64,000 bases of DNA from Bugula neritina (taxonomy: Eukaryota; Animalia; Bryozoa), in contig OZ037765.1 in NCBI GenBank assembly GCA_964035545.1, positions 34,555,880 to 34,619,879 on the forward strand. Reading direction: 5' to 3'. The notes beneath the pieces are model-generated. The model saw only the letters and a list, made by a program, of their open reading frames with translations. It did not search any database and was not told where the DNA came from. Each line of letters begins with the position of its first letter. Position 1 is the stretch's first letter. This document shows positions 1,996-51,153 of the stretch, one piece after another. The position numbers and the translations under genes were made by a program.

Positions 1996-4900
1996 TCACT
2001 GTGGGAGTTGTCTGCCATGGAACTTTGGAAAGAAGAAAAGTTTTCTGAGGTGAGTGAAAGTACATTCCTGACAATTAGGTACATTACCACCAGCTGCTTC
2101 ATCTCCTGTCTTCTTACAATATGCAATACTGACTCGTCTAACTCTGTCTTGTATCTGTAAGTATAAATGGAAGAGAAATATAAAGCTGATGACTCAACAG
2201 TCAACACACTCCACAGTATCATAAAAAGAGTAATACTGAAGTACTTACTATCCTAAACAGCTCGCTAACATCTCTGTGACAGCTGTGTCTGTAGAATGTA
2301 GCCACCAGTATTCTGATAAACCAGGTACCATAATTCTTATTCCTACCAGCCTTGTAAGCTGCAACACGTGAAAATGAGCAGTTAAATATGAATGTCAGAC
2401 TATTATGTAAATTTGTTTATATTTAAAAATTGCAATAGCTTTATTTACATGCAACAGTTTAATTTGCACCAATAAAAGTTTCAGTCAACTCAAATATAAT
2501 TTTCTTCTCACTAACTTTCTGTACTTGGCTTCACAATGTAGAAGTCATCAGCATCTAGGTGAGTGAATCTATCAAAGTGAATATTTGGAGACACATGTTG
2601 ACCTGCAGAAGACTCACTCCCAGCTGTCGCAGAAGATGAGGGTAGAGGGGTTGGTGTTGGTGGTGAAACGGTGTCTGGGCTTTGTGACTGTGCAGCATTA
2701 CCAAAGTCAGTTCTGCCTGTGTTGAAATACATACAATGTAGACTCTGTGGTATGATGGTGAGTAATAAGTTGGGACTGGACTCACAGGCAGAACTCTATT
2801 ACACAGCACTGGTTATTGGATTCCAGTTATGAGGTGTAGCTCACTTCCACATAGGCATACTCCAATAACATCAGGCATCTTGAAAATAATGATTCATCAA
2901 ATAAATTAATGTTATAGTTATAGGAAATTATGCAATCTAACTGCTAGTTCTAGTAACATGAGGAACAACTCTGCATTACTCACTGCCAGAACAAGCATGG
3001 AAGATGATGAGTTTGGGTTTTCCTCTCATGGCAAGAAAGTTACTAGCTGCGAGTAAATCTTTGACTTCTGACAAGTTGACAGGTTTACAGTATTTGTCAT
3101 AGAAGATGTTTCCAGAAGTTCCGTGTGACATGATGACTAGAATGAACATGCCAAGATCCTTGTGGTCTTTGTGGGTGGTCTCCTTCCTCACTTCTGATAA
3201 TATCTCCTGGCAAAATAAAAGTATATATTGGTGTGTAAAATCAAGTTTGGATAAGTAAATGTGTCTACGCACGAGCCAAAGCTGCTTCAAAATTACGTTA
3301 TAACATTTATAACAAAGATGACCCATTAAGCAGTGCTGCTGTTTCTAAACTAAAACTCGGAACTGAGAAAAACTAATAATTTGAATACAAGTTAACAACA
3401 TATTATTGTAGATTTGTTGGAATACAATGCCTCGGTTCTGCAGTAAAAATACTTGCTATATATTGTTGTGAAATTATGCTTCACTGCAATCAATGGGTCT
3501 ATTGAATGAAACCCACTTCGCCAGGTTTACTAATTGCTAAGAGTTTATTAACTTCAAATTACACCATAAAAGAATAACACCAACTAACACAAAACAATTA
3601 CATAATTGAGAGCTCACTACACACAACTGTACACTAACAAGTCCAAATCTTCTCTGCCGGCTACGCTGCCTAACTAGCTCCCACTACAGTTAGCAGCTAC
3701 GCCTACTAATTAGCCTGTCAGCCCTCCTTGATTGGCCAAGACGATCAGGCCATCCTAGCAGCCTGACACCAGCTGCTTCACTCAACTGTCGGCGAGAAGT
3801 ATCCTTTCGATACAAATACAAAATACTAATAATCTACTAATAATACAATTATTAATACTATTAACACACTATGAAAAACCCTTACACTCTCCCTTCCTAT
3901 CAAAAGGTACTACTCAAAAAAAACAAATAAAAGAAATATAAAATAATACAAGGGTAACACAATCAGAATAAATGTCACGTAAACTTTAAAACATTGAGAG
4001 CAATTAACAGCTCGCCAGCAGGGTTTGATGTGTCTCTTCACCAGATCATGTAGGGGAGCACGAATATAGGAAAAAAGGTTGTACGTTCACACATCTGGTC
4101 CTGTAGTCCTGGATGCAACCACATGACGGGGGGGGGGTTTAGGAACACGCTCACCTAGTCAGAGCCAAGCACGCATCTCGCCGACGCCGGTGGTCCAGAA
4201 GAATCAAGCATGACAAAGAAAAATTCCCCTAAGGAAAGGGGGGGGATCGTCACCATTTCCTTCCTCATAGGGTAGTGTCGAGCGCCAGCAGTCCATGCTG
4301 ATTAGTCGGTCGAAATACCGAAGGGGGGATATAGAGTTCGTCCTCAGGCTATTTTTCTTTCTTCTATTATCATGATTGTTATTATTATAGTCCATCTTCG
4401 TATCGAGATGTAGTTACTTTCATGCAGTATTTTATATTACTATTAAATTGCGGTTATGTTTATTACTGTCATTACGATTACGATTCGCCTCCTTCAGCAC
4501 CAATGTAAGGTGATCGAGCCACGGGCGAGAAAAGGGAAGAACTCCTTTTGTCTTTTGTTGGTTGCTACTGCTCATCACGGGGGTCGTAGGGCACCATCCG
4601 CCACGACAGTCACCAAGTCTGCTGTGCAGTCAAGCCAAGCAGTCAAGTCAAGCCAAGCAGTCATAATGTGAGTCAGCACCATGAGCACACGAATGCCAAG
4701 AGTCAGTGAACATGCAGATGAGAATGATGGGTGACTGCGTGACGGTGGTGCAAAGAGAAAGAAATGCCGCTCCGCTAATAAAGTCTCACCTGCAACAGAA
4801 TGCCAGAAACTGTTGAAGGGGTTTTTACCTGGTCAGTACGACACCTCGACTGAGTCTCGCAATCTAGTAACCCACTGATTCTTAACAAACCACGCGGGCG

Positions 4901-7900
4901 ACTGCCTCACTCAAAGTCGTCAGTGAAATTACCTGACTTAGAAAACCAGCCTTATTGTTATGATAAAGCGAGACTGATTTTAAGCTACCAGTTTGAAATC
5001 CATTTAAATAATAGAATTATACTAGTAGACTTACCATAGGACAGCCACGACGTTAGTCTACTGCCCACTTAGGCCTCATAGTTTGCCAGCTTGCCAAGTG
5101 CGTGCTCGCACGTTGGCAGTTGAAATAGAAAAGAACGCTCTTTGCAGTGAAAGTGATTACAACACACCCCCTTTCACTAGCGAGCTGGCTTCGCTCTTTT
5201 CTATACCCCGGTGGTGTTATTATGGTATATATTTACACCACTGGGTAAGCAACTCACAGTTGTGTTTCCTTGTACTTAGGAAATGCAACTCTCAGTTGCT
5301 TATCTCCCCAGATTTTTTTTTTATGATAGCTGATGGATGTTTTTCCACTGCATCACACAAGAAATCTTTCAAATAAGATGGTGGCGCCCTAGTGCGTTGC
5401 CTACGCTCAAACTGCTCTGGGGAATTTGCTGCTGCTGGTGACTCTTCCACCACGGGTGGTGTCACCAGTACGGGGGGGGGTCCACCAGTACGGGTGGTCC
5501 CTTCTCAGCTGCCTCTTCCTCATGAATTTGAGGAAATTCCATCTCATCCGGGACGACAGGGGTGTCGGCCCGCTCCACTGGTGGTGGGGCCAGCTGGGAC
5601 CGGTCTTCCGGTGTGTCGGCCTCCTCCTCCTGGGGTGGAGGTGGCCGGGGCAAGTCGGGCGGCGCGTCGGCCGCCCTCTCCTGACCTGGCAGTATCTCCT
5701 CTATCTCTCTGTATGCCATGCCTCGCCCCCTCATAGGAGGGCGTCTAGCAGGCTCTAAGAGAGGAGGTGCTTGACCTGCTGCATCAGGGTTTGTCCAGTA
5801 AGGTTTCAGATGTGCTTCTTTCTGGACCGACACTTTTCCAGACCGATCCACTTTGTAGGTGTGATTGGGCATCACCTCAATCATGCAATAAGGACCCACG
5901 AACTTCGGCTGCAACTTAGCCACCTGTCCACGCTGCCGGCGATGACTGGTCATCCAGACCCAGTCCCCCACCTTGTACAAAGGGGGAGTCATCAGGATCA
6001 CCACTCCTGACCTGCCACTGCTGCTCACGTAGCACCTCGTGAGCTGTCCTCATGCGTTTTACGAGCTCATCCACATAATCATGGACGCTGCTCTCTGGAG
6101 CCGGAACGTGGTAAGTTACGTGCTCAGGAACCCTTGTTTCTCTCCCCAGCATGAGAAAGTTAGGGGTCTTCAGTGTACTGGAGTGAGGTGTACTACGGTA
6201 TGCTCGCATGATTTGCGGCAGTACCAAGTCCCACTCTTCCTGGCTTTTACTGATAAGCAGGCTTCTCAATGAGTCCACTAGCGTTCGGTTGTTCCTCTCC
6301 ACAACCCCATTCTCTTGCGGGTGATACGGGGTCGTCCGACTCTGGTTTACCCCCCACGTTTCACAGAGATCGCTCATAAGTTGCGACTGAAACTGGGCGC
6401 CTTGATCAGAGTGTATTTGTTCCAGCAAGCCGAAATAACAGAACACCTGCTGATCCAAGGCTCTGGGCACCGTGACGGCCGACGTATCTGGAATAGCCAG
6501 TGCATCAGCCCACTGCGTGAAATGGTCAGTTAACACCAGTATCCAATTATTACCTCTCACTGTCGTGGGCATGGGTCCTACCAGATCTACAGCGACTACT
6601 TGCCACGAACGACCGGCATGGAGGCGGCGCCTCCTTGCGGTCTCAGTGGAGCGACCATGCTTGCTAGCTTGGCATATCTCACACTTCCGCACCCGGAGTC
6701 GGACATCCCGGGTCATACCGGGCCAAATCACTGGAGTTGAAGACACCTGGTCACCCGCCCAGCCCCTGCATGAGCTTGCTTATGGGTGTCCCAGATCAAC
6801 TCCTGCCTCAGAGCGGACGGACAGACTACCCTTTCTCGTTCCTGGCGATTGGTGCCCGCTGCTAGCGTTATCACTAACAGCCCATCGCCATTAAACCAGA
6901 GGGAGTCCCAGCGGTCGCAGAAATACTTAAACTCCGCACACCTGACCCGCTGTTCGGCCTCACTAGGCCGACGTCCCTCCTTCTTGGCCCAGACTAGATC
7001 AGCTACTACCCTTGGTAGCGTAACTTGGAGCCGACACAGCTCCCTGACGTTCTTGAGCAGCGTGGGGTTTGCATGAAGGTTGTTAACAGCTTAACTAAGG
7101 GTTTCGGACCAAAGTTTTCCTTTATCCCAGCTGTATATACCTGCTTTTCCCGCCTGTTCTTCAACGTCCGAGCGAGGAGGTCCGCCATCCCTACGCTCGA
7201 TATGTTGGCATTGCTTACACCTATCTGCCTGGCGGCGGCTCAGTCCGTCGGCATTACCGTGTTTCTTACCGGGTCGGTGCTCGATCCGATAAAAAAACTC
7301 TGCCAGGATTTCAAGCGAGCGCGCTACTTGGCTAAATGGTTCAGCCCGTCGACACAGCCATATCAAAGACGCATGGTCCGTTCTTAGCCTGAACGTGCGT
7401 CCGTACAGGTATAGTCTAAAGTGTTTAACCGCCTTGACTACTGCCAGGAGTTCTCTCCTGGTGGTGCAGTAGTTCTTTTCAGGCGCCAACAGGGCCTTAC
7501 TATAGTAAGCTACCACCACCTTGCGACCATCTTGGACCTGAGACAGCACAGCCCCCACATTGTGGTTACTGGCATCAGTACCCAAAATGTACTCCTTCGC
7601 CGGATCAGGATACGCCAGGATGGGCGCCTCTACCAAGCGATCCTTGGGGTGGTCAAATGCCTGCGGTTCTGTCTGCGTCCACTGCCATTGCACCCTCTTT
7701 GCTGTCAGCCGGTTTAGTGGCTGTGCAACTTCTGCGAAGTTCGGTATGTACTGGCGATAGTACCCTACCAGTCCCAGGAATGCCCGCAATTCAGGGAGGT
7801 CGACAGGGACAGCTCAGTCCCTCACAGCCCATACCTTCTCGGGGTCGGTGGGGACCCCAGCTCGACCAACTACATGGCCCAGGTATTTAACTTCTTGCTG

Positions 7901-10900
7901 CAACAACGTGCACTTAGAGGGCTTGAGCTTCAGACCAGCAGCTCGAAGTCTGTCAAACACCTCTCTGAGCCGACTGACATGTGTATCGAAGTCGGGGCAG
8001 ATGACAATGACATAATCGAGATAGATGAGCAAGGTCTTCCAGTGCAGCCCACTCAGGACCTGCTCCATGAGCCGCTGGAAGGTGGCCGGTGCAGACGTAA
8101 GTCCGAACGGCAGTACCTTCCATTTCCAGAGCCCATCCCGCGTAATAAACGCGGCCTTGTCCTGTGCATCAGGACTCAGGGGCACCTGCCAATACCCGCT
8201 TAACAAGTCCAACGTGCTGAAGAACTTGCTACCAGCTAAAGCATCTAGCGACTCATCAATCCTAGGAAGAGGGTAACCATCCTGGATGGTCACGCTGTTC
8301 AGTTTGCGATAATCCACGCAAAACCGCCAGCTCCTATCCTTTTTCCGAACCAGAACAACTGGCAACCTCCAAGCACCATCGGCTGGCTCAATCAGATCCC
8401 GGCTCAGAAGGTCTTGCACCTGTCTGCTCACTTCCTTTTCCTTCTCAGGACGTAACCGGCGAGTCGACTGCCTGGTAGGCACCGTCCCAGCCGCCAGGGG
8501 TATCTCATGACAGACAGCCTTAGCCAGGCCCATGTCGTGATCGCCACAACTGAACAAATCCTTGTACTCAGAGAGGAGCTGCACCTCTACTAGGCATTCC
8601 CGCTTGCTCTCACAGCCATCACAAGCATCCCCATACAATTCCACCAAGTGTTCAGGCACCGGCCCCCTGCCGTCCCTAATGGATACCCGTCGAGCCTCGT
8701 CCGCTGTTTCTAGGGCCGGACCAACATCCTCTTTCTGTATGGAGTGGAATTTTCCCACTAGCGACTCAGCCGGCAATTCTACTGACTCCGTGAAAGGGTT
8801 TATGCACTGTACCAGGAACTCCCCCCGCTCATCCAGCCTATTCAGACTGTTAGCGAGCTGGACGCCCCCCAGTGCTTCCTCCACCACTCCTAAATCGGAG
8901 ATTTCCCTACTGTTCACTTTGCAGCGTACTGTAGCCCGAAAGCGCCCAGGTACAGTACAACTCTGTACCACCTGCACTCCCCCCACCAAGGGTTGGCCAA
9001 ATCGGTCGACACAGGCCAGCTCACGTCCGGCCATCACCACCGCCGACTTGCTAAAGTCGATGTAGCACCTGTGTCACTTCAGAAATGGCATGCCCAAGAT
9101 GGCGTCCTCCTTGAGTTGACTGACGATAAAGGTCTCGCTGATCGTCTGATCACGGACTCGACCAGTCAACTCTATCACGCCATAAAAAGGAATACATGAC
9201 CCGTCCGCCAACGTGCCATGCTCCCCATCATATGGCTTCAGGCTAGCCTGGTCCCCAGCATTGAGTGTGTCAAACAGACGCCGGCTCAGAAGGTTTGTGG
9301 TACACCCAGTATCCAATAGGAATGTGGCAGCTTTTCCGGGGAGGAAATAGCTGCTTCCATATGGCTGGGCGCTCATTGAGCAATTTGTCTGTGGAGGTGA
9401 CACCTCGGGTGCATGGGCTTGGGAATGCACCTGCGCTTTCCGGTTGCGAGGGGGTCGTCGACGTTGCGTGGGCAAGCGGGTTACATCTCGGTCTTTCTCA
9501 CACACGGGCGGCCGAGTGAATGCTCGGTCCTGCGCTCGTGTGGGCAACCGAGGGTAATCCTTGTCTTGCTCCCACTCGTCGTACACTCCATCATCAGGCA
9601 AACCTTCAAAGTGGTTTTTGAGTGCTCAAGCCGGAGGTTTTGGCAGGCCTTGGAGCCTACTAACTCTCCTTGGGGCTTGCCACTTCAGTGAAGGCGGCCT
9701 CCTCACCCGATTGGGTTTGGGCCTTGGCCTTCGCCTCGGAGGGTTAAACCGAGGCCCACAGTTGGCGGAGTCTACCGTGGGCCGCTCCTTTAACTGCCTC
9801 CCTCTACCGTGGGGGCAGCTTTGCATGAAGTGCCCACCACTACCACAACCCCAACATACGGGGCCGCCTCCTGTCGACAGCTGCCGACAACCTGGAGGGT
9901 TGCTCGACTGTCGTTTGTTGGCGTAGTTGCCTGATCTCAGCCAACAGCTCTTGAATCAAGCTTGTGGTTAAGCTAGTCGGCTGCCGCCGTGGCGACATGT
10001 ACAGCTGTCTTGGCCGACCTCGTCGACGTCGACGCGTCGTCGTTGTCGGCCTCGACTTGCTGCAATGTTGCCCCAGGCCGGCACGTACTGTTGGCTTGGA
10101 AATAAGCATTCCCAAGCCTGAGAGCTCGCTCCATAGTCTCAACCTCAGCCACCAGCAGTTGTTGCTTCAGCCCTAGGTTGTTATTAGACTGGAGGAAAGC
10201 ATTTAGCGCCAGACTCTGCCAACCATTCGCAGGCAAATTGCCATAGGCGATTTGTGCTAGCCGCTCAACTACGGTGGCGTGCTCTCTCAAGGTAGTCTTA
10301 GGATTTCTCCTAAGTCCTTCGAGCTGCACCCGAGCATCCCGAGCAGTAAGCCCAAATCGAGCTCTTAACGCCTCAAAGATCTCGCCGATGTCCGGGCCAA
10401 TCCCATAGGGTTTGGCCGGCCCGTCAGACACAACCGTAGCTGAATCAGAGTAACCCTGGCAGGCCATTGACAGATGGCCGCCACATCACTGAACTCAGTG
10501 ATAAATTGCTCCACATCTTCTTCTCCAGAGAAGATGGGAGCGTGCAAGTGGTACCTGTCCATAGGCAGCGCTGGGCCGCCTATGCCGTCCTCCTCCATAG
10601 CTACTGGTTGTTGACGAGGTAGATCCTTTTCGTCAGCCATCTTTCACTCCCTGGCTAGGAGCATTTACAATAATTAAATCCCACCGCTGCCACCACTGTT
10701 GTGAAATTATGCTTCACTGCAATCAATGGGTCTATTGAATGAAACCCACTTCGCCAGGTTTACTAATTGCTAAGAGTTTATTTGCTTCAAATTACACGCA
10801 AAAAAGAATAACACCAACTAATACAAAACGATTACATAATTGAGAGCTCGCTACACACAACTGTACAGTAACAAGTCCAAGTCCTCTCTGCCGACTACGC

Positions 10901-35300: not shown

Positions 35301-38300
35301 TTTCACCTAAAGTAGACACTACCAACTTCTATTATATTTCATAATTGTTCCAGCTAAAAAGTCTTAGCTATAGTTTTTTCATAGAGAAACTACTATAAAA
35401 CAGGTCATTCTAATTTCTTATTTAGCAACAACAAAATTATAAATAGAATAAGTAATGAAAGGCTATGAAAAAATAAATAATCAGTTTGAGTTTGATATAA
35501 AAACACGAACATGGTGATGGTATTGCAGTTTCACGTGTCATTTTTATTTCCTTCTAACAGTCCAACTTTTGTTGAACATAAATCTACTAAATTTTTAGCT
35601 TTTGTTTAGCTAGTAAATTTTAAATTTGTCATCATTTAAATGTTTCATAGTTGATAATAATTATTTTATTGACGCAAAATTTTTAGCTGTTTATCGTTAA
35701 ATTTAACTAGTAACAACTTTACTAGTAAAAGCACTGTTGCTAAGCAACTATACACTACTATTGCGACAAAGAGGTGCGATGTTTGTTAGTTGGGCATTCG
35801 TCGGACCCAACGAACATAAAAACGTCGTGTGTGAATAAGCTATTGAAACATTAAGTATAGTGAGTATATAATTACCTGAGAGTTACTCGAAGTATATAGG
35901 CATGACACTGAAGTATCGAAAGAACAATAAAGTGGGGTCTGGCCGGCCAGGGGAAATACAAGGACCAAACGTATAGTACTGATTTATAATTAATTTATCA
36001 CAAAGTCTATCGGCGTGTTTATCTACTGTAGGCTGACATCTTTCATCTCGTAGTCTCTCGTTCGTCCTTGACCCAATATGTATTTTAATAAACAAATGCA
36101 CATGACATTATAACGTAGCATCTCGCTAGTCCGTAATTAGTGATAAACAAAAGACACATAATAATATAACATCTCCCTTCTTAAGCAGGTGACTTCCTTC
36201 TATAACATTGTGATTAAGGTTGCTGAGATTAATAATATGATACAAGTATACATGATTAATATGGATTGGGGATTAACAATGAAACTAAATAACTATGTAC
36301 AGGGTGGGAAACGGCTAATAGCTTATCCCATGTGGAAGTCCTTGTATTTAGCGGGGAGGACTCCACGGTTGCTTCTGGGTTGACGCTCTGGTGGTGGTGC
36401 CGCGTTCCTGAGAGGTGTTGCAGGCAGGGCAGGCATGTGGGGGGATTCATTAGGAGCATCCCCAACATCAGTATCAGCAGCATCAGCGACACTAAGGGTC
36501 TGTGTGTTATCTGGTTTGAGGTGAACACGATTCCTACGCACTATAGACTGACCGTTGTCAACCAAGTAGGATCTGGGGGAGTTATGCTGTTCGACAATCA
36601 TTCCTGGCGACCATTCTTTGTCAGTGCTTGACCTGATTAGTGCAGGAGTCCCAGGTTCCAGATCAGCCAACGGCCGTGCATGGCGGTCATGGTACTTCTT
36701 CTGCAAGTTTTGGTTGGCTATTAGCTGTTGGCTAGCCTCAATAACAACTGGTTTAAGCGACTCGGCAGTGATTGGCAAATCACTTCTTAGGGCTCTGTTG
36801 AACAGAAGCTCAGCTGGACTGAAAGCACAGCCAGTGATAGGAGATTGCCTGTATCTGAGTAGTGACCTGTATATATCCTCTCTTTCATCCTCACATTTTT
36901 TTAGAAAGGCTTTCATCGTTTGCACATAACGCTCAGCCATTCCATTGGACTTAGGGTAGTGCGGACTAGATGTCACAATGGTGAAGCACCAGCTTGATGC
37001 AAAAGTCTGCATGACTCTACTGCTGAAAGGCATGTTGTCCGCCAGAATGGACACTGGTACCCCGTGTACAGCAAATATGGATTTCAATGCCAAAACCACG
37101 TCTTCAGCAGTCTTTCTCCTGAGTAATCTCAGCTCGGGGAAGTGAGAGTAACAGTCCACAACTACCAACTACCAAGTAATCATTATTCTTATAGGACAGT
37201 ATATCCATAGCCACTTTATTTCATGGTAGACTTGGCAGCTCATGAGACATTAACGGCTCTTTCTGTTGACGGTTGGAAAACTTAGCGCAGGTGAGGCAAC
37301 TTGACACTTCATTCCGTATATCAGTAGATAGCCCAGGCCAATAGAATGATTTCCTCGCAAGCTCTCTGCATTTCTCAACGCCCAGGTGGCCCATGTGTAG
37401 CGACTTTAGAATGTGCTTCCTCTGTGACTTCCGAACTATAAGCCGCTCTTCAACGTAAAGAAATCCATCCACATCATAGATGTCAGATCTAACATTCCAG
37501 TAGGGTTGGATTTCTGTGGGGGCCTGACTCCGTCTACTCCATGACCAACCATCTTGCAGTGCTTTTTTCAGACTGTCCAGTGTCGGGTCTTCAGCATATG
37601 ACTGTCTCATCTCATTCATGGTGCTATCATCGGTTTCTAAGTCATGAACCATCACAACTTCACCTTCGAGATCACACTGATCATTTGTAACGCGCTGAAG
37701 GTAGGCTCGGGATAGTGTGTCAGCAATATATAAATACTTGCCCGGAACATATGTGAACTCAGCTATCCGGTATCTTTGTAGTCGCAGAAGTAGTCTTTGC
37801 AGCCTTGGGATGCCTTGTGCAACGACTTGTTCATTATCGGGACGAGAGGTTTATGATCCGTCTGTATGTGAACAGCACGTCCATAGAGGTAGCTGTGAAA
37901 GCGCTCACAGCCGAACACAACTGCTAGCAGCTCCTTATCTATTTGGGGATAGTTGCACTCAGTCTCAGTTAAGCTGCGTGAAGCGTATGCAACAGGTTTA
38001 CCTTCCTGTAGTAACACTGCACCAAGTCCCGACTTTGAAGCGTCAACTTGTAAATGCGCATCCTTGGTAACATCAAAATACTGCAAGACAGGTTCGGATG
38101 TAAGCAAGCATTTAATTACCTGGAAGCTTTCCATTTGTTCTTTGGACCACACCCACTGACTATCACTCTTCAGTAGCACTCTCAAGGGCTCAGTACAGGC
38201 TGACATGTTGGGTATGTAGGCTCTTAGAAAATTGAGAGTACCAATCAGTCTTTGTACTCCCTCTCGGTCTGTTGGGTCAGGCATGGCCTCAATAGCAGCT

Positions 38301-41300
38301 ATCTTGTCTGGGTCAGGACGCAGACCATCTTTCGATACTATATGGCCTAAATAGCGTACCTCCGTCTGATTCAACTGAATCTTCTTGCGATTAAACTTCA
38401 CATTAGCCTCTTTGGCCTTTACCAATAGCTTTCTCAGATTGGCATCATGTTCCTGTTGTGTCTTTCCAGCTACAATGATGTCATCAAAATACACTGAGAC
38501 ACCAGGCAAGTCTCCAAATATTTGCTCCACCTTCTTCTCAAAGACTTCAGCACTTGAGTGAAGACCAAATGGAAGTCTATCAAAACAGTAGCGACCATAT
38601 GGGGTGTTGAACGTTGTGAGCAGACTACTCTCTTTGGTCAAGGCTACATGCCAGTATCCATGTTTCATGTCCATGATGGTGTAGTATTGCATACCATTGA
38701 ATCTGAAGGCAATGTCTTCTAATGTGGGTATCTTGTGATGTTCTCGTCTCACTGCTCTGTTCAGGTCCTTGGGGTCTAGGCATATACGAACCGACCCATC
38801 TTTCTTTTCAACGCATACCATACTACTCACCCAGTTGGTTGGTACGTCAACCTTAGATATGATTCCAGATGCCTCCATATCATCCAGCTCCTTTTTCACT
38901 TTGTCTAACATACTGAGTGGGACACGTCTTGGATGATGAACCACAGGCTTCACACTCTCGTCAACACATATCTCGTGCTCTCCATCAAGTCTGCCAACTC
39001 CTTCAAACACCTCAGGGAACTCCTGAAGTATCGAGGTTGACAACTGATCAACTCTGCGGATCAGACCAAAAAATTCAGCAGCCTCGAGGCCAAGTATGGG
39101 AGGAAGGTCCTCATCAACCACCTCGAAGTGGACACTCTGGCTATGCTCCTTGTGGTTCACGGTGAGTTGAACTGCACCCACATTCTTGACCTTGGTCTTA
39201 TTATAGCCGTAAAGGCATACAAAAGTGGGCTTTAGAGTAGCACCAAGTGACTGAACGGTTCTTAGGTTGATGCAATTTGTTTCAGCTCCAGTATCAATCT
39301 TAAACTGAATATCATTGGCCTTTCCTTTGTCACTGACCTTCATCGGAAGAATCTAAGATTTCAATTTAGATTCATTAGAAAGAGCACCAACAGCACCTAT
39401 GAACAAGCTATTCATTTGTTTCGCTGCAAGAGCTTTGCCTTTGCAGACTTTCTCAAAGTGATTTTTCTTCCCGCAGTTATGACATGTCTGGCCATAAGCA
39501 GGACATCTACCTTTGGCATGTGTATATCCACAAAATTTGCAATCTATGTTGTCCTTACGTGTGTTACTTCTGGTTTTATTTTGCGTAGCGCCAGGCTGAC
39601 TCTGCACAGTGCTGACTGCAGCATCATTTATCTCATTGACTGTCTTTATAGTAGTATCACCGGCAGCCATCCTTGACATCTGCTGTTTGGTAATCTCAGC
39701 AGCACGGATGTCATCTAAGGCACTCTCAAGTTTAACGTTTTTGTCACGGAGTAGCCGCTCCTTCAGCTTTCCATCAGTGAGTCCAAACACAATTCTGCAG
39801 AGAAGCATTCGGTCTCGCAATTCGCCAAAATCACATTTTGTAGCTTGAGTTTTTAGACGTTTCACAAAGGTGTCAATGGGCTCTCCATCACTCTGACTGA
39901 GAGACCAAAAAACAAACCATTCATACAACACGTTACGCCGGGGATTGCAATAGGCTTCAAACTGCTCCAAAACATCAGCCACAACATCCTTGCTTTTACC
40001 TGCGCGAAAGTCAAATTGACCATAAATCTCAGTAGCTTCCTCACCAGCCTGGTTCAGAAGTATAGCAACCTGACGTCTATTAATACCCGCATTCTCAGGA
40101 GGAGGCTCTTGGCCACTCTCTTGAGGCTTCAAAATCAAATCACTTGCAAGCAAATAATTTTCCAAGGCCCTTCTCCACTTCCTCCAATTGTCTGACACAT
40201 TACCTTCAAATGATAATTCTCCAGGGGCCTTCAAACCTTCCATGACAGCTCCAAGGCAGACCAACACAGTCCACAACAACAAACAACTAAAAGCTAAACA
40301 ATCACCACTCCAGTGGCAAAGTAGGGTGCGAGTACGATCTAGCTGCCACCATGAAACATTAAGTATAGTGAGTATATAATTACCTGAGAGTTACTCGAAG
40401 TATATAGGCATGACACTGAAGTATCGAAAGAACAATAAAGTGGGGTCTGGCCGGCCAGGGGAAATACAAGGACCAAAAGTATAGTACTGATTTATAATTA
40501 ATTTATCACAAAGTCTATCGGCGTGTTTATCTACTGTAGGCTGACATCTTTCATCTCGTAGTCTCTCGTTCGTCCTTGACCCAATATGTATTTTAATAAA
40601 CAAATGCACATGACATTATAACGTAGCATCTCGCTAGTCCATAATTAGTGATAAACAAAAGACACATAATAATATAACAGCTATAATAGCTTATTCACAC
40701 ACGACGTTTTTTGTTCGTTGGGTTCGACGAATGCCCAACTAACAATCATCGCACCTCTTTGTCGCGCCAGCTGCAATAGTAGTGTATAGTTGCTTAGCAA
40801 CAGTGCTTTTACTAGTAAAGTTGTGACTAGTTATAGAAATCATCATAGCTTGACCACCTGCACTGTATCAGTATGATCTTTGTGATCCTGAATACAAAGA
40901 TGCACGTAAGCAACTGAGTTGATGTGCACAATGAGTAGCAGTGACTTGAAAAAAAGTTAAAATGTAGTTAAATTGAAACTGATGCAACTGAATCATTTCA
41001 CCTAAAGTAGACACTACCAACTTCTATTTTATTTTATAATAGTTCCAGCTGAAACATCTTAGCTATAGTTCTTTCATAAAAAAACTACTATAAAACAGGT
41101 CATTTTAATTTTTTATTTAGCAACAATAAAAAGTATAAGTAGAATAAGTAATGAAAGGCTACGAAAAAATAAATAATCAATTTGAGTTTGATATAAAAGC
41201 ACGACTACGGCATTGCAGTTTTACGGGTCATTTTCATTTCCTTTTCACAGTCCAACTGTTGTTAAACATAAATCTACTAAATCTTTAGCTTTTGTTTAGC

Positions 41301-44300
41301 TAATAAATTTGTCATAATTTAAATGTTTCATATTTGATTATAATTATTTTATTAACGCAGAATTTTTACTTAGTTATCGCTAAATTTAACTAGTCACAAC
41401 TTTACTAGTAAAAGCACTGTTGCTAAGCAACTATACACTACTATTGCAGCTGGCGCGACAAAGAGGTGCGATGATTGTTAGTTGGGCATTCGTCGAACCC
41501 AACGAACAAAAAACGTCGTGTGTGAATAAGCTATAAGCCAATGATGTGCGATCAGATAACATTCGTCAGCTGAAACCTAGCTGGGTCAGGTTCCAACGAA
41601 ACTGTGAAAAGTCGATCACGTGATCCAAAACGAACAAACTTTTCTGCTGTCAGACCAATCAAAGAATGCTAGTTTGGCGCAATTGACACAACTGTCCGAT
41701 CACGTGATCCAAAACTAACAAACTTTGTATTCGTCGTGCCATTTTGGTCCGCTATTCGTCCAATTCGTTAATCGTGTGAATAAGCTAGCAGTCGACGCAG
41801 AGTCGTCCCTGATACTAACTAACTCCATAACAATAAGCATAACGCTAGCATCTTCTACCAAGCACGCTAAGCCTAGGGCCACACGGTGCGTATTTTCGCA
41901 TGCGAAAATTGAAATCACAAGTAGCAAAGGTGTCCACTGTGAGCGTTGAGAAAACGTTGCACTTGTCGCTCTGCATTTTCAACGCAAGTGCGAATCGTCT
42001 CTGTCGTCGTCACCTAATTGGCTGGTAGTGATTAAGCGAGCCCAATTTCGTTATTTTAGTGCTAAATTCCAGTAAATTGCGTTTTATTGAAAGCGAGTGC
42101 GATTTAAAAATGAAAGCTTTATTTATCACGCATCACTGACGCTACAGTGGACACCTTTGCTACTTGTGGTTTCAATTTTCGCATGCGAAAATACGCACCG
42201 TGTGGCCCTAGGCTAACTGCCAGTGCAAATCATCTACACCTTCTATTAAGCTGATTGGCTATCCTGCGTGAGGTTGTTGATTCTATTTAACTAGTCTTGC
42301 CTTGTTTAACTGCGTACATCAGTAGCTAGCAATAATTGTCCAGCCGAGTATAAGAGAGATTTTACGCATTCTAATTGTCAGCCATTACGATGATTGATCC
42401 TTTGCACTTGTAGACATCATGCCAAGCGTATAGAGAATAAGCCACGAGGAGTTATCCTTTCGATAATAACATAAACTAAAATCCCTTACAATATTATAAT
42501 ATACCTCAGCGGGCTCAGTATAACATTATATTATATCTCAGTATAACATTATAATATATCTCAGTATAACATTATAATATATCTCAGTATAATATTATAA
42601 TATATCTCAGTATAACATTATATTATACCTCAGTATAATATTATAATATATCTCAGTATAATATTATAATATATCTCAGTATAATATAATATATCTCAGT
42701 ATAATATTATAATATATCTCAGTATAACATTATAATATATCTCAGTATAACATTATATTATACCTCAGTATAATATTATAATATATTTTAGTATAACATT
42801 ATAATATATTTCAGTATAATATTATAATATATCTCAGTATAACATTATAATATATCTCAGTATAATATATTATATCTCAGTATAACATTATAATATATCT
42901 CAGTATAATATTATAATATATCTCAGTATAATATTATAATATATCTCAGTATAACATTATATAATATAGCTCAGTATAATATTATAATATATCTCAGTAT
43001 AACATTATAATATATCTCAGTATAACAATATGTTATATATCAGTATAATATTATAATATATCTCATAATATAGACATAATTATAATAATATAAGTCACTC
43101 TGATTATGGTAAAATATTACGTCATAAGTTTCTGCACAATTATATTGACTTTATGTTTATATATATATTGTATTTATTTTAGTATTATTCTACACTATAA
43201 TATAATACACACCTGTTTGGTAGAGTTGACAGTTTACAGTAACTCATGTACAACACTCTCAATGATAGTAAGGATGTGAATATATTGTCAGGTAGACCTT
43301 CAGATAGGTTAGTTGCTGATATATCCAATACCTTAAGATTCTTCAGTGAAGATATGCTGTAACATAACATACAGGTAGAAAATCATGAAAGGTAATTGAA
43401 CTATATACTGTACATTCTACTCAACGGTATCATAAGAGGTCACTTATGAGCTTTTCATAATGTTATAGCAACTTTATATACCAATATTTATCAGAGTAAA
43501 AAGTTCCAAGTTGTCACACCATGTCTTACATCTGATAGAATAGAATAGTAAAGACATGACATCACATATATTATGTATAATGATTTATATAATGTAATTA
43601 ATTGATACAAGTCAGTTTATGTACATCACAAAAGATTAGAAGCTTCTACACCATTATTCAATAATATATTTATATATTGTATTTATTCTAGTATCATTCT
43701 ACACTATAATATAATACACACCTGATTGGTAGAGTTGACAGTTTACAGTGACTCATGTCTAACTCTCTCAATGATAGTAAGGATGTGAATATATTGTCAG
43801 GTAGACCTTCAGATAGGTTATTCGCTGATATATCCAATACCTCAAGATTCTTCAGTGAATATATGCTGTAACATAACGAAAAGGTAGAAAGTTAACCTAC
43901 TATATAAAAGTAATATTATTGAATAAGAATAATTTAGTTTTATTTAACTCTTGATCTGACCACTAAGAGTCAGATAAATAATACAGCAGTTGCTACTAAG
44001 GCTCAGGTTATTTCAAAGAGAAAGAGAAATATATAATAGCTTCACATTACACTCAGCTACAAGAGAGTATCTAACTTATATGGATATAATTTTATACTAT
44101 AACAAATTTTATACCTGGTGCCAATATAAACTGTTACACAGCAAAATAATTTATTAGAGGAGTAAGTGAGAAGTTGTTATACCATTTCTATCTGAGTACA
44201 TATCTAATAGAATAGAATACAATAATTGACTTGTGACCTATAATATACATAGAGTCTAGTTGACTCAATAAAGATAGTGCAGATAACTTCATAATGTATA

Positions 44301-46015
44301 ATATATTACACACCTGTTTGGTAGAGTTGACAGTTTACAGTACTCCATGTGCAGCTCTCTCAACGATAGTAAGTATCTGAATATATTGTCAGGTAGACCT
44401 TCAGATAGGTTATTATGTGATATATTCAATACTTCAAGATTCTTCAGTGAAGATATGCTGTAACATAACGAAAAGGTAGTAAGTTGACCTACTATATAAA
44501 AGTAATATTATTGAATAAGAATAATTTAGTTTTATTTAACTCTTGATCTGACCACTAAGAGTCAGATAAATAATACAGCAGTTGCTACTAAGGCTCGGGT
44601 TATTTCAAAGAGAAAGAGAAATGTATAACAGCTTCACATTACACTCAGCTACAAGAGAGTATCTAACTTATTTGGATATAATTTTATATTATAACAAATT
44701 TTATACCTGGTGCCAATATAAACTGTTACACAGCAAAATAATTTATTAGAGGAGTAAGTGAGAAGTTGTTATACCATTTCTATCTGAGTACATATCTAAT
44801 AGAATAGAATACAATAATTGACTTGTGACGTATAATATACACAGAGTCTAGTTGACTCAATAAAGATAGTGCAGATAACTTCATAATGTATAATATGATA
44901 CACACTTGTTTGGTAGAGTTGAGAGTTTACAGTAACTCATGTCTAACTCTCTCAATGATAGTAAGGATGTGAATATATTGTCAGGTAGACCTTCAGATAA
45001 TTTATTCCCTGATATATTCAATACCTCAAGATTATTCAGTGAAGATATGCTGTAACATAACATACAGATATGATAACGTATTAACTTATATATACTCATC
45101 ACATATTGGTTTGTTTTAAATTGAAACATAAATAGAAATACAATAAACAAGGTAAATAATACTAAAGCTAGTGTTAGTGCGAGGAGAGAAAACTCCACAT
45201 TCTACTACAAAATAATATCTCACTTATGAATATATTTTTATATTATAATATAGTACCTGGTCCAGTCAGCATTACTCTCTACTCCAGATACCCTCAGATG
45301 TGTGAGATGAGGAAACAGTTTGTTGATATTTGGAGGAATGTCATCCTCCAGTACAACATGAGTAACTGTATGATGTTTACTTATATCATTGGCCTCTTCT
45401 ATAGTGTAGGGTGTAGTATCATTCTTCATCCACTTATCATCAGCTCCATCTATACTGGATGTGTTGAACCACACCTCGTACTTCTCTATAAAATATTCAC
45501 CACTTTATAAATAATAACTTTGATATCAAATAATAGAGTGTCTCAACACTATAAACAGTATTGAAGTAAACTTGGATATTTTATAACTTCAAAATACATC
45601 CTGTGATATATTCTGACAGGTGAAAGGGTAGCCACGTTGTTTATACTTCTGTACAGTATATGTTATAGTATAATATAATATAATATAATATAATATAATA
45701 TAATATAATATGGTATATGTCAGTATAATAGTTATAGTATAATAGTTATAGTATAATAGTTATAGTGTAATAGTTATAGTATAATAGTTATAGTATGATA
45801 GTTATAGTATAATAGTTATAGTATAATAGTTATAGTATAATAGTTATAGTGTAATAGTTATAGTATAAAAGTTATAGTATGATAGTTATAGTATGATAGT
45901 TTTAGTATAATAGTTACAGTATAATAGTTATAGTATAATGTTAAAGTATAATAGTTATAGTACAATAGTTATAGTATAATAGTTATAGCATAATAGTTAT
46001 AGTATAATAGTTATA

Positions 46016-46092
<77 letters not shown>

Positions 46093-46489
46093 TAAGCAGG
46101 TATATAACATCACATAATAAACACTATAACAATATAATACTCAGATATGGTCAACACAGAGTTAGGTGCAAAGTAATGAAACAGTAGTGAAGAAATGTAA
46201 GAGAAAAGTTATGTTCTCGTGAGAATATAAACCTGCACCTCAACGTATAATTTATTAAGAACAATAAAGAACTTATGCTATCTCAACTTCTCCACTACTG
46301 CACCTTAATGTCATAACACATAAAAAAAAAGTATAAAATTTCTGTAGTTAGCAGTTGAAGTATTCATATTTATATAATTTACTAACTTAACACAGATTGA
46401 CCTGAAGGTGGAGGTGAAGGTGTAGGTGTAGGTGTAGATGGAGGTGTAGGTGGAGGTTCGGGTCGAAGTAGAGATTTACGTTGACCCAT
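1996..46489 (-). CDS. LRR-ROC-COR-caspase fusion gene, copy A (Roco/MFHAS1-like GTPase with C-terminal caspase), 14 coding exons, about 1364 aa
   Basis: Exons in transcript order: 46489-46402, 45485-45257, 45049-44906, 44457-44314, 43865-43722, 43356-43213, 16797-14792, 14682-14590, 11749-11541, 11388-11188, 3206-2984, 2716-2516, 2358-2249, 2154-1996. All junctions are GT-AG with matching phases; total 4095 nt with no internal stop. The exons from the LRR cassettes to the stop recur in the same order, with short introns, in copy B. Confidence 0.88.
3464..11120 (-). mobile_element. Ty3/Gypsy LTR retrotransposon 1 (degenerate), in the intron that splits the caspase p20 of copy A
   Basis: LTRs 10697-11120 and 3464-3886 (TG..CA, roughly 5% diverged by eye); TSD ATAT; PBS TGGTGGCAGCGGTGGGATT (tRNA-Leu type); PPT next to 3886; frameshifted gag, PR (LDTG), RT (YLDY), RNase H and integrase (5462-10640). 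Confidence 0.95.
13496..13565 (+). mobile_element. tRNA-derived SINE-like head
   Basis: A-box-like TGGTCCAGAGG and B-box-like GGTTCAACCC at tRNA spacing; no cloverleaf apparent. Confidence 0.35.
14792..16797 (-). CDS. Copy A large exon: last LRRs + ROC GTPase + COR
   Basis: LRRs ending LTSPPLEICERG; G1 GNTMVGKT, G3 DMGGQ, G4 THKD; COR motifs LPLVWEEV and LTYMHDCGKVLWY; Cys-rich end CYCAHC. Matches ORF 14655..16796. Confidence 0.95.
17400..25008 (-). mobile_element. Ty3/Gypsy LTR retrotransposon 2 (degenerate) with extra ORF3
   Basis: LTRs 24720-25008 and 17400-17689 (about 15 differences); TSD GTAT; tRNA-Leu PBS; gag 23589-24635 with CCHC knuckle; pol fragments (LDSG, YLDD, RNase H, integrase) to about 19216. 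Confidence 0.95.
18060..19150 (-). pseudogene. Element 2 ORF3: C2H2-like zinc fingers + Pro/Arg-rich segment + coiled coil (frameshifted)
   Basis: CRLCQLHF...FCPCGEYSYHRDYILRHQRTVRC; after a frameshift LRETEERIRELEREVQRLAPRISAAASKLRALRDSVAQLKKNA*; collinear with ORF3 of element 3. Confidence 0.75.
25274..25831 (+). mobile_element. Solo LTR
   Basis: TGTGGTA...TACTACA; TSD ATAT; internal TATAAAA and AATAAA; absent from the uninterrupted copies of the host element (near 35585 and 41275). Confidence 0.75.
25912..26583 (-). mobile_element. Solo LTR, related to and inverted relative to 25274-25831
   Basis: TGTGAT...ATTACA; TSD CTTT; empty site GTCGTGCTTTTATATC seen in the host-element copy near 41190-41205 (reverse complement); shares CTGGAGCTCA and CCGA-rich motifs with 25274-25831. 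Confidence 0.75.
26945..34445 (-). mobile_element. Ty3/Gypsy LTR retrotransposon 3 (young) with extra ORF3
   Basis: 305-bp LTRs 34141-34445 and 26945-27249 (2 differences seen); TSD CTAT/CCAT; tRNA-Leu PBS; gag 33156-34109 (CWECGNQGHFRRYC); pol 33040->28637 (IDSG, YFDD, RNase H, integrase) with frameshifts. Confidence 0.96.
27535..28356 (-). CDS. Element 3 ORF3: two C2H2-like zinc fingers, RS/P-rich basic stretch, coiled coil
   Basis: CQICGEECASHRSLKLHVNAH, FCPCGYNDVYPYPVTRHRATGC, KRRTRSPSPPMRRRRTPSP, LATVEERLLRLQEEFTQLAPDLL; 273-codon open frame between pol and the 3' LTR; true start codon uncertain. Confidence 0.75.
   Translation of the reverse strand: MYCINTVETFSDYTRPATTRVRDRTLPAPHPEEYASGDRPEPLCRRWRWVSPQTEEEIETAWGSRGRTRCQICGEECASHRSLKLHVNAHLLLTFCPCGYNDVYPYPVTRHRATGCFLGENYVVDAKLYPEFLTLIRPLVKKAMLLAVLTSGFQRVLDNTRQQSPLVSDRLQITYTPEEFTYPEEGEISPTPTKRRTRSPSPPMRRRRTPSPDPVRLATVEERLLRLQEEFTQLAPDLLNTTTGLFQLKGSVCRMKRKLRTCQAKHRRAQQGL
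34674..35842. mobile_element. Same TIR family, copy 2 (complete, inverted, inserted inside copy 1)
   Basis: TIRs AGCTTATTCACAC; flanked by TAA at 34671-34673 and, after removing element 4, TAA at 40684-40686. Confidence 0.8.
35844..40679 (-). mobile_element. Ty3/Gypsy LTR retrotransposon 4 (compact, Mag-like), young
   Basis: 328-bp LTRs 40352-40679 and 35844-36171 (2 differences seen); 5-bp TSD GCTAT; PBS TGGTGGCAGC; gag with two knuckles (CKFCGYTH..C, CHNCGKKNHFEKVC); PR IDTGA, RT YFDD, integrase; two stops and two frameshifts. Confidence 0.96.
40687..41533. mobile_element. Same TIR family, copy 3: rearranged derivative with the same end on both sides (about 145-bp inverted repeats)
   Basis: 40687-40833 is the reverse complement of about 41388-41533; flanked by TAA on both sides. 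Confidence 0.75.
41871..42213. mobile_element. Tourist-like (PIF/Harbinger) MITE
   Basis: About 70-bp TIRs GCCTAGGGCCACACGGTGCGTATTTTCGCATGCG; TSD TAA. Confidence 0.85.
42491..43070. repeat. 23-bp minisatellite (AGTATAAYATTATAATATATCTC)n; other half at about 17020-17070
   Basis: Direct tandem units. The same unit flanks the left end of the 25-kb nested insertion, so one array was split. Confidence 0.9.
43213..45049 (-). CDS. Copy A: four 144-bp LRR exon cassettes (48 aa, two LRRs each)
   Basis: 45049-44906, 44457-44314, 43865-43722, 43356-43213. Consensus SISSLKNLEVLNISxNxLSEGLPDNIFTSLLSLRELxMxxCKLSTLPN; each has acceptor ttacag and donor gtgtgt. Confidence 0.92.
45257..46489 (-). CDS. Copy A N-terminal exons: MGQRKS start with Pro/Thr-rich stretch (46489-46402) and LRR N-cap exon (45485-45257)
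   Basis: MGQRKSLLRPEPPPTPPSTPTPTPSPPPS joins in phase 1 to EKYEVWFNTS...IPPNINKLFPHLTHLRVSGVESNADWT, which ends in phase 2 and so fits the LRR cassettes. Confidence 0.7.
45660..46090. repeat. 14-bp minisatellite (TATAGTATAATAGT)n followed by (TA)n
   Basis: Direct tandem units. Confidence 0.9.

Positions 46490-49518: not shown

Positions 49519-51153
<1,635 letters not shown>

What the first reader, a model, noticed from the sequence alone, without database searches (positions are those of the whole stretch)
1996..46489. Single-chain LRR-ROC-COR-caspase: a candidate Roco-type sensor/GTPase-switch/protease receptor
Seen: 14 in-frame exons link LRRs, an intact ROC GTPase (GNTMVGKT/DMGGQ/THKD), COR, an acidic linker and a full caspase (SHG...HACSG plus p10). 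There is no CARD, DED or death domain. The ORF track shows the parts only as scattered fragments because 26-kb and 8-kb TE-filled introns separate them; compact copy B confirms the order. Established: vertebrate Roco proteins (LRRK1/2, DAPK1, MFHAS1) carry no caspase; Roco proteins dimerise through COR in a nucleotide-regulated way; initiator caspases activate by induced dimerisation. Inference: ligand binding at the LRRs shifts the ROC-COR dimer state and directly activates the caspase, giving an NLR/inflammasome-like circuit in one polypeptide that uses a GTPase instead of a NACHT/NB-ARC ATPase. I do not know of a characterised animal protein with this architecture, but I could not search.
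Basis: partly seen in the sequence, partly recalled or inferred. Interest (0 to 1): 0.95.

Follow-up and report, generated by a model that had tools for sequence, protein, structure and literature searches.

The report
Bryozoan GTPase-gated sensor-caspase receptor family
This is a real, intact gene, most likely from a moss animal (bryozoan), that joins a fast-evolving sensing surface, a GTP switch and a cell-death-type protease in one protein; the same layout was already predicted in bacteria and sits in amphioxus and bryozoan databases, but I found no functional study of it.

Summary
Fourteen AG/GT exons in continuous phase encode 1,364 aa: LRRs, ROC, COR, linker, caspase; no death fold. A tandem copy, six metagenomic loci and 14 Watersipora subatra gene models repeat the order, and the close loci and the one model mapped repeat the splice sites, so the fusion is not an artefact. 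The source is most likely a cheilostome bryozoan.

The architecture is not new. Bacterial LRR+AP-GTPase+COR+caspase proteins were catalogued in 2021, amphioxus 'LRRs-caspase' hybrids were reported in 2008, and 12 amphioxus LRR-ROC-COR-caspase models are in databases. I found no functional study and no paper on the bryozoan family.

Additional findings: amino-acid change concentrates on the concave LRR face; LRRs come as 144-nt phase-2 cassette exons of variable number; the caspase module was swapped between paralogues at the intron after COR; the S1-pocket Gln varies (Q/H/E; HACSG here); an N-myristoylation-type start (MGxxxS) recurs.

Best reading: a membrane-tethered innate sensor whose ROC-COR state gates caspase dimerisation. 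In the bacterial Roco model GTP favours the monomer, so the active caspase state may be the GDP or empty dimer. Function is inferred, not shown.

The parts
46402..46489 (-). Copy A exon 1: start MGQRKS (MGxxxS, N-myristoylation-type) plus Pro/Thr-rich stretch
   Evidence: MGxxxS also starts P0188, P0193, P0061 and a candidate first exon of L002. Least supported exon: its own sequence is not conserved in relatives
45257..45485 (-). Copy A exon 2: N-terminal cap / degenerate LRR
   Evidence: homologues in L002, L005, L008 at 44-68%
44906..45049 (-). Copy A exon 3: 144-nt phase 2-2 LRR cassette (two repeats)
44314..44457 (-). Copy A exon 4: LRR cassette
43722..43865 (-). Copy A exon 5: LRR cassette
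43213..43356 (-). Copy A exon 6: LRR cassette
14792..16797 (-). Copy A exon 7: three LRRs, ROC GTPase (G1-G4), COR-A, COR-B and a C-terminal Cys motif (C613, C616, C656 invariant in the family)
14590..14682 (-). Copy A exon 8: helix after COR
   Evidence: 72-80% identical in B, L001, L004; helix in the proxy model
11541..11749 (-). Copy A exon 9: acidic flexible linker
   Evidence: partly disordered in the proxy model
11188..11388 (-). Copy A exon 10: start of caspase large subunit with the first S1 arginine
2984..3206 (-). Copy A exon 11: catalytic His (SHG) and Cys (HACSG)
2516..2716 (-). Copy A exon 12: long intersubunit linker with Asp sites, start of small subunit
   Evidence: disordered in the proxy model
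2249..2358 (-). Copy A exon 13: small subunit with the second S1 arginine and WF motif
1996..2154 (-). Copy A exon 14: end of small subunit and stop codon
62983..63484 (-). Copy B: two LRR cassette exons (63484-63341, 63126-62983); the 5' exons are not in the window
60543..62545 (-). Copy B LRR-ROC-COR exon (P-loop GNTMAGKT), 88% identical to copy A in protein
58095..60413 (-). Copy B linker and caspase exons (60413-60321, 60039-59873, 59732-59532, 59252-59030, 58812-58612, 58450-58341, 58253-58095), intact
3464..11120 (-). Ty3/Gypsy-type LTR element in intron 10 of copy A; LTRs 95% identical, TG..CA ends, 4-bp target duplication, coding region in pieces
17400..41800 (-). At least three Ty3/Gypsy-type LTR elements in intron 6 of copy A (17400-25008, about 26945-34450, 35844-40679) plus other repeats; same orientation as the gene, coding regions in pieces

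Best explanation
An intracellular innate-immune (non-self) receptor from an expanded bryozoan family of MFHAS1-like Roco proteins, with its own protease attached. Shown from sequence: one spliced ORF; intact G1-G4 GTPase motifs; COR fold; caspase with His-Cys dyad and both S1 arginines; variable LRR face; conserved protease. Inferred, step by step: (1) an N-terminal myristoyl group holds it at a membrane; (2) at rest ROC-COR keeps the tethered caspase domains apart, most simply as a GTP-bound monomer as in C. tepidum Roco; (3) a ligand on the concave LRR face, or clustering on a target membrane, promotes GTP turnover and COR dimerisation; (4) the roughly 100-residue helix plus flexible linker lets two caspase domains dimerise and cut their intersubunit linkers, as initiator caspases do; (5) the protease cuts cell-death or defence substrates. 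The Roco module does the job that a death-fold prodomain plus adaptor plus STAND ATPase does in apoptosomes and inflammasomes.
For: Gene integrity and conserved splicing. Roco fold and caspase fold, no death fold. G-motif residues G104, G109, K110, T139, D158, G161, T227, H228 and D230 are kept in over 90% of about 100 relatives. Concave LRR positions of exon 7: pN 0.42-0.57 against pS 0.18-0.30 for the exon (Fisher p 5e-4 for A-B; 2e-5 to 0.02 for four other pairs); other LRR positions pN 0.02-0.10; ROC and COR dN/dS about 0.2-0.3; caspase core dN/dS 0.09-0.35. LRR cassette number is variable (1 to at least 6) and the same positions are the most variable. Large family: 14 W. subatra models with caspase on 7 chromosome-scale scaffolds, and Bugula neritina KAF6026298.1. 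Caspase module swapped between paralogues. Amphioxus relatives swap caspase, GT4, OTU, Death and trypsin at the same position, as the bacterial AP-GTPase systems do. Brown algal ROCOs show the same LRR exon pattern and concave-face selection.
Against: No transcript, ligand, substrate or activity data. Only monomers could be modelled, and the whole chain only through a W. subatra proxy (pTM 0.64), so domain coupling is not shown. The active-site motif departs from QAC(R/Q/G)G. Synonymous counts at the 18 concave codons are also high (5-8 of 11 sites), and the positions were taken from the LRR pattern after I had seen the alignment, so positive selection is suggested, not proven. Variable LRRs fit allorecognition as well as pathogen sensing. 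The nucleotide-dimer rule comes from a bacterial protein about 15% identical. Copy A carries at least four same-orientation LTR insertions that could impair its expression.
Confidence: 0.55

Rival explanations
1. Same biochemistry, different job: the family serves colony allorecognition or programmed tissue turnover (polypide recycling, metamorphosis) and senses polymorphic self ligands, not microbes.
For: Variable LRR faces and copy-number expansion are equally expected of allorecognition loci. Bryozoans are colonial, fuse or reject neighbours and recycle polypides (own knowledge).
Against: The genes are spread over at least 7 scaffolds in W. subatra, not one locus. Non-colonial amphioxus has the same architecture. 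The protein has a cytosolic fold.
Confidence: 0.15
2. Tripwire or release model: ROC-COR holds the caspase inactive, and activation comes from cleavage of the acidic linker by a pathogen protease or upstream caspase, or from loss of an inhibitor on the LRRs. The GTPase governs location or stability, not protease activation.
For: The linker is acidic with several Asp sites, partly disordered and evolves faster than its neighbours (dN about 0.11). MASL1 uses GTP to control complex size and chaperone binding.
Against: A released caspase domain would still need a dimerising platform (established for initiator caspases). The strongest excess of change is on the LRR face, not in the linker.
Confidence: 0.15
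3. The caspase domain has altered specificity or is weakly active, and signals by scaffolding or by cutting one dedicated substrate, not by launching apoptosis.
For: HACSG here; QACSG in W. subatra; E(T/V/A)CSG in L002, L005, L007, L008. The variable position is the Gln that lines the S1 pocket in canonical caspases (own knowledge).
Against: His, Cys and both S1 arginines are kept, and the domain is under strong purifying selection.
Confidence: 0.1
4. The fusion is a prediction artefact: an LRR-ROC-COR gene ends after exon 7 and a separate caspase gene follows; or copy A is a decaying, silenced copy.
For: The exon-7 frame runs on to a stop at 14655. Some W. subatra models end without a caspase. 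Copy A has at least four LTR insertions. No transcript was seen directly.
Against: Read-through is 2-78 aa and unconserved while the GT donor is kept in all 8 copies; exon 8 is 92.5% identical between A and B against 60% for the intron before it. Copy B has no start codon where A has an ATG in exon 9. RefSeq isoform sets join the two parts. Neither copy has a stop or frameshift.
Confidence: 0.05

Closest known systems
Amphioxus LRR-ROC-COR-caspase models (C3XQ16, C3ZI91, CAH1239456, XP_019627981), probably the 'LRRs-caspase' shortcuts of Zhang et al. 2008 (PMC2575513)
   Same: Same domain order, metazoan caspase, no death fold in most; matching intron positions inside the caspase; intron after COR; part of an expanded family with swappable effectors.
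   Different: Only about 22-26% identical in ROC-COR; QACRG motif; in the one gene mapped, LRRs and ROC share one long exon instead of cassette exons. The 2008 paper does not mention the GTPase, and I could not confirm that its models are these. Common origin is neither shown nor rejected (AU p 0.205 and 0.458).
Bacterial LRR + AP-GTPase + COR + effector conflict systems (Kaur et al. 2021, PMC8195603)
   Same: Same chassis and proposed logic; caspase is one of at least 24 C-terminal effectors, with 36 of about 2,700 supplement matches reading COR+CASPASE.
   Different: The bryozoan ROC-COR groups with animal Rocos, away from the bacterial-type rows; its caspase matches caspase-3, -9 and CED-3; the gene has 13 introns. 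No sign of recent transfer. The bacterial systems are also predictions.
Vertebrate MFHAS1/MASL1 (LRR-ROC-COR)
   Same: LRR-ROC-COR without kinase; the name RefSeq gives the bryozoan relatives; GTP-regulated complexes and toxicity on GTP loss.
   Different: No caspase; single-copy conserved gene (own knowledge); orthology not resolved in the tree.
Brown algal ROCO candidate immune receptors (PMC3341825, PMC11378527)
   Same: Expanded family, LRRs on repeated cassette exons, diversifying selection on the concave face.
   Different: One repeat per exon there, two here; mostly no effector domain (three genes carry an IPR009003 trypsin-like peptidase); the word caspase does not occur in PMC11378527.
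NLR inflammasome / Apaf-1 apoptosome
   Same: Works like them in the proposed logic: repeat sensor, nucleotide switch, caspase activation by proximity.
   Different: Ras-like GTPase with COR instead of a STAND ATPase; no death-fold adaptor; one chain; LRRs are N-terminal.

Membership tests
Roco proteins | ROC GTPase with G1-G4 motifs | tested here: met
   Pfam Roc E 1.4e-7; GxxxxGKT, switch-I Thr, DxGG, THxD kept in over 90% of about 100 relatives
Roco proteins | COR domain directly after ROC | tested here: met
   Pfam COR-A weak (E 0.002); model matches LRRK1, CtRoco and COR-only 3dpt, E 6e-23 to 2e-10
Roco proteins | GTP binding and hydrolysis; nucleotide-dependent dimer-monomer cycle | not testable with these tools
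   Biochemistry needed; only monomer models are available
Metazoan caspases (C14A) | His-Cys catalytic dyad in SHG and xACxG | tested here: met
Metazoan caspases (C14A) | Canonical QAC(R/Q/G)G pentapeptide | tested here: not met
   HACSG in A, B, L001, L004; QACSG or ExCSG in relatives
Metazoan caspases (C14A) | Two S1-pocket arginines that bind the P1 Asp | tested here: met
   Both align with the caspase-3 arginines through P0069
Metazoan caspases (C14A) | Large and small subunit fold with intersubunit linker | tested here: met
   By proxy: W. subatra P0189 model, TM 0.79-0.87 to caspase-3/6/7/8/9 and CED-3; window exons 10, 11, 13, 14 align to it at 40-58%
Metazoan caspases (C14A) | Asp-specific proteolysis | not testable with these tools
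   Assay needed
Classical initiator caspases | CARD, DED or death-domain prodomain | tested here: not met
   No hit in the exons scanned; proxy linker is one helix plus coil
NLR / STAND receptors | NACHT or NB-ARC ATPase | tested here: not met
   The nucleotide domain is a Ras-like ROC
Bacterial AP-GTPase conflict systems | LRR + AP-GTPase + COR + variable C-terminal effector | tested here: met
   Architecture as in PMC8195603; caspase module swap
Bacterial AP-GTPase conflict systems | Descent from the prokaryotic clade | tested here: not met
   ROC-COR lies among animal Rocos (SH-aLRT 96-99); metazoan-type caspase. The outgroup rows are unnamed and taken as bacterial from their annotations and contigs
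Amphioxus Roco-caspases | LRR-ROC-COR-caspase in one chain | tested here: met
Amphioxus Roco-caspases | Single common origin of the fusion | tested here: inconclusive
   The best ROC-COR tree separates them, but AU p = 0.205 (ROC-COR) and 0.458 (caspase); long bryozoan stem, few reference caspases
MFHAS1/MASL1 orthologues | Orthology to vertebrate MFHAS1 | tested here: inconclusive
   Same broad animal clade, unresolved at its base
Brown algal-type variable ROCO receptors | LRRs on symmetric cassette exons with a diversifying concave face | tested here: met
   144-nt phase 2-2 cassettes in variable number; concave positions most variable; no codon site-model test was run
Brown algal-type variable ROCO receptors | Alternative splicing or somatic shuffling of LRR exons | not testable with these tools
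   Needs transcripts or several individuals

The most novel reading that the evidence does not exclude
Bryozoans independently built a large family of GTPase-gated, membrane-tethered sensor-caspases that does the work of inflammasomes without STAND ATPases or death-fold adaptors. It diversifies at both ends: LRR cassette exons change what is sensed, and swapped caspase modules with Q, H or E in the S1 pocket change what is cut. With amphioxus and bacteria this would be a third separate invention of the circuit, and it would give a direct protease read-out of the Roco dimer-monomer cycle.
Probability: 0.25. Interest if true: 0.85.

Novelty: new variant of a known kind. Interest (0 to 1): 0.62.

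Why it matters
It would show that Roco GTPases can serve as the switch of an animal immune receptor, in parallel to NLR ATPases. That idea has been proposed from genomes of bacteria, brown algae and amphioxus; I found no test of it. A caspase needs to dimerise to work, so this protein is a natural reporter for an open question in the LRRK2/Roco field: which nucleotide and oligomer state is the signalling state. It also gives bryozoan immunity, on which my searches found no such paper, a concrete candidate receptor family with clear mutational tests. The score is held down because the architecture is already in the literature and in databases, and function here rests on inference.

Tried and rejected
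All searches went exon by exon by reference, and W. subatra RefSeq proteins stood in for the whole chain. One unnamed 1,048-aa MFHAS1-like protein (P0263) was left out of all analyses because it might be vertebrate.

Led nowhere: two metagenome-contig scans found no locus; Huang et al. 2008 on amphioxus immunity could not be retrieved; the model ids behind the 2008 'LRRs-caspase' figure are images and not searchable; two Roco reviews mention no caspase fusion; searches on bryozoan caspases, Roc-COR plus caspase and LRR-caspase returned nothing relevant. No RNA-derived contig spanning COR to caspase turned up: the metagenomic and Logan proteins inspected stop in intron read-through.

Rejected: recent transfer from bacteria (tree, introns, caspase type); a hidden death fold in the linker; an independent caspase gene starting at the ATG in exon 9 (absent in copy B); extra LRR or caspase exons inside the TE-filled introns. 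The formal tree test of the caspase swap on exon 11 alone was uninformative; the swap rests on crossed identities and the DNA breakpoint.

Full report
1. Observation. The gene is on the minus strand. Exon-by-exon checking gives 14 exons from 46489 to 1996, every intron GT..AG, continuous phases, no internal stop, 1,364 codons plus stop. Introns 6 and 10 are 26,415 and 7,981 nt and hold at least four Ty3/Gypsy-type LTR elements in the gene's orientation, with LTR pairs 95-99% identical and coding regions in pieces. Copy B (63484 to 58095) repeats two LRR exons and everything from ROC-COR onward, intact; its 5' exons are not in the window. An NDC80-like gene on the plus strand lies between the copies.

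Is the fusion real? Between A and B the exons from the end of COR to the stop are 92-99% identical and the introns 59-89%. The donor after COR is kept in eight copies, while read-through beyond it runs anywhere from 2 to 78 residues. Loci L001 and L004 carry exons 7-14 in the same order; L002, L003, L005, L007 and L008 also have caspase exons downstream of ROC-COR. The W. subatra model XP_067935178 has the same layout: MG start exon, cap exon, five LRR cassettes, a 668-codon ROC-COR exon, helix exon, linker exon and five caspase exons with matching boundaries. No transcript was seen directly.

2. What it is. Pfam finds LRRs, Roc and Peptidase_C14, but COR only weakly. The exon-7 model (pLDDT 92.5) matches LRRK1, LRRK2, C. 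tepidum Roco and an isolated COR domain. The GTPase motifs are kept in over 90% of about 100 relatives, and three cysteines at the end of COR are invariant, with a fourth at the splice junction; this is probably a zinc site (inference). A W. subatra paralogue folds as LRR-ROC-COR, one helix, a flexible linker and a two-subunit caspase with TM 0.79-0.87 to caspase-3/6/7/8/9 and CED-3, with no death fold. The catalytic exon's best solved relatives are caspase-3. The dyad and both S1 arginines are present, but the pentapeptide is HACSG.

Source. The closest named relatives are from the bryozoans Watersipora subatra (30-38% identity) and Bugula neritina. The six closer ones I fetched (52-87%) come from JGI sample 3300002729, an unnamed metagenome rich in animal DNA. 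I infer a cheilostome bryozoan other than W. subatra. The family is large: 14 W. subatra models with a caspase domain on 7 chromosome-scale scaffolds and about 28 JGI clusters for the ROC-COR exon.

(a) Sensor-like variation. At the 18 concave-face codons of the LRRs in exon 7, pN is 0.42-0.57 against an exon-wide pS of 0.18-0.30 (Fisher p 5e-4 for A-B). Other LRR positions have pN 0.02-0.10, ROC and COR dN/dS about 0.2-0.3, and the caspase core 0.09-0.35. Caveats: synonymous counts at those codons are also high, and the positions were chosen from the LRR pattern after seeing the alignment. (b) The upstream LRRs are 144-nt phase 2-2 cassettes, one to at least six per locus, most variable at the same positions. 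(c) Effector swap. A and L005 are 80% identical in ROC-COR but 47% in the catalytic exon, while L005 and L002 are 51% and 74%. DNA similarity of copy B to L005 and L007 stops at 60535, just inside the intron after COR. (d) The residue before the catalytic AC is Q in W. subatra, H in this subfamily and E in the swapped subfamily; it lines the S1 pocket in canonical caspases (own knowledge). (e) The start MGQRKS fits MGxxxS, as do 3 of 19 W. subatra models and a candidate first exon in L002, suggesting N-myristoylation. (f) A and B differ at dS 0.21 in exon 7 but 0.05 in the caspase core, which suggests gene conversion of the protease half.

3. Mechanism. I commit to an intracellular non-self receptor in which ROC-COR gates proximity activation of the tethered caspase (confidence 0.55). 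Shown: the anatomy, the intact motifs, the pattern of selection, the family expansion and the module swap. Inferred: membrane tethering, ligand binding, nucleotide control and proteolysis. On direction, GTP turns C. tepidum Roco into a monomer (PMC11052575), a review proposes dimerisation at the membrane on GTP hydrolysis for LRRK2 (PMC6337361), and loss of GTP increases MASL1 toxicity (PMC3995007). Initiator caspases need to dimerise (established knowledge), so the simplest fit is a GTP-bound monomer at rest and an active GDP or empty dimer. That predicts a P-loop mutant that is switched on, not off. Rivals: allorecognition or tissue turnover (0.15), a tripwire or release model (0.15), an altered-specificity or scaffold caspase (0.10), and an artefactual fusion or dead copy (0.05).

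4. Comparison with what is known. Kaur et al. 2021 describe bacterial LRR + AP-GTPase + COR proteins with at least 24 C-terminal effectors including caspase, as predicted counter-invader systems; 36 supplement matches read COR+CASPASE (PMC8195603). Zhang et al. [quoted passage not shown] Databases hold 12 amphioxus LRR-ROC-COR-caspase clusters, within a family whose close ROC-COR relatives carry GT4, OTU or Death domains instead, and more distant ones a trypsin-like domain. That these are the 2008 genes is likely but unconfirmed. Brown algal ROCOs show the cassette-exon and concave-face pattern. In trees the bryozoan ROC-COR forms one clade (100) among animal Rocos, away from bacterial-type rows, and a locus of its nearest outside group carries a weak Death hit after COR instead. 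The best tree separates it from the amphioxus Roco-caspases, but a single origin is not rejected (AU p 0.205; caspase tree p 0.458). It is a Roco protein and carries a caspase-family domain with a non-canonical motif. It is not an NLR and not a classical initiator caspase, though it probably works like both together. No other animal group showed ROC plus caspase in one protein, but those searches see limited candidates and lengths.

5. Novelty. Not categorically new: the architecture and the idea are in print for bacteria and, in part, for amphioxus, and bryozoan members are in RefSeq under automatic names. I found no functional study of any such protein and no description of the bryozoan family in 10 searches of an open-access library. 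The cassette LRRs, the caspase swap, the S1 variation and the myristoylation-type start make it a new variant of a known, still untested kind.

6. Verdict. Observation confirmed; interpretation partly supported; novelty: new variant of a known kind; interest 0.62. The most novel reading not excluded has probability 0.25 and would deserve 0.85.

Noticed in passing
window 52660-57340, + strand: An NDC80/HEC1-like kinetochore gene (Pfam Ndc80_HEC E 7e-17 on 53269-53556, coiled-coil exons near 56500-57300) lies between copies A and B, with minisatellite-filled introns.
   Followed up: partly
window 3464-11120, 17400-25008, about 26945-34450, 35844-40679: Four Ty3/Gypsy-type LTR elements, all in the gene's orientation and all inside copy A, with LTR pairs 95-99% identical. 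Copy B has none. Their coding regions are in pieces.
   Followed up: partly
window 25010-26944 and 34448-41786: A further family of repeats of about 250-700 bp occurs in direct and inverted copies around the LTR elements, one copy apparently split by the 35844-40679 element. Not identified.
   Followed up: no
window 43705-45061: A 766-bp tandem duplication (94% identical) covers an LRR exon and its intron, a recent cassette duplication.
   Followed up: partly
window 49700-51060: A long inverted repeat around a TA-rich core, seen by eye; possibly a non-autonomous DNA transposon.
   Followed up: no
window 1839-3210 against 57937-59256: The caspase halves of A and B are far more alike (dS 0.05) than their ROC-COR exons (dS 0.21), suggesting gene conversion.
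   Followed up: partly
L002 13791-14009, L005 13270-13491, L007 6456-6677, L008 13079-13297: A caspase subtype with Glu in place of the S1-pocket Gln (ETCSG, EVCSG, EACSG) and THG; its specificity may differ from that of ordinary caspases.
   Followed up: partly
L006 7248-7416: The second-sample copy of the L005 gene has a break in its catalytic caspase exon; an assembly error or a null allele.
   Followed up: no
L009 10001-24944: An unnamed animal contig with two tandem genes of 1,881-codon LRR-ROC-COR exons, the second followed by a weak Death-domain hit; its group is nearest to the bryozoan clade in the tree.
   Followed up: partly
proteins P0292 and P0295: Unnamed metagenomic proteins that combine an LRRC8/pannexin-like N-terminal region (PF12534), LRRs and a caspase domain without ROC: another sensor-caspase fusion.
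   Followed up: no
proteins P0214-P0247, P0252-P0255, P0277-P0290: Amphioxus Roco proteins carry a wide range of effectors (GT4 glycosyltransferase, OTU, Death, CARD, FIIND, trypsin-like), echoing the bacterial AP-GTPase systems.
   Followed up: partly
proteins P0065 and P0195, P0198 and P0208, P0210: W. subatra has near-identical Roco models with and without the caspase, and RefSeq isoforms cut short inside the caspase; possible decoy forms or model errors.
   Followed up: partly
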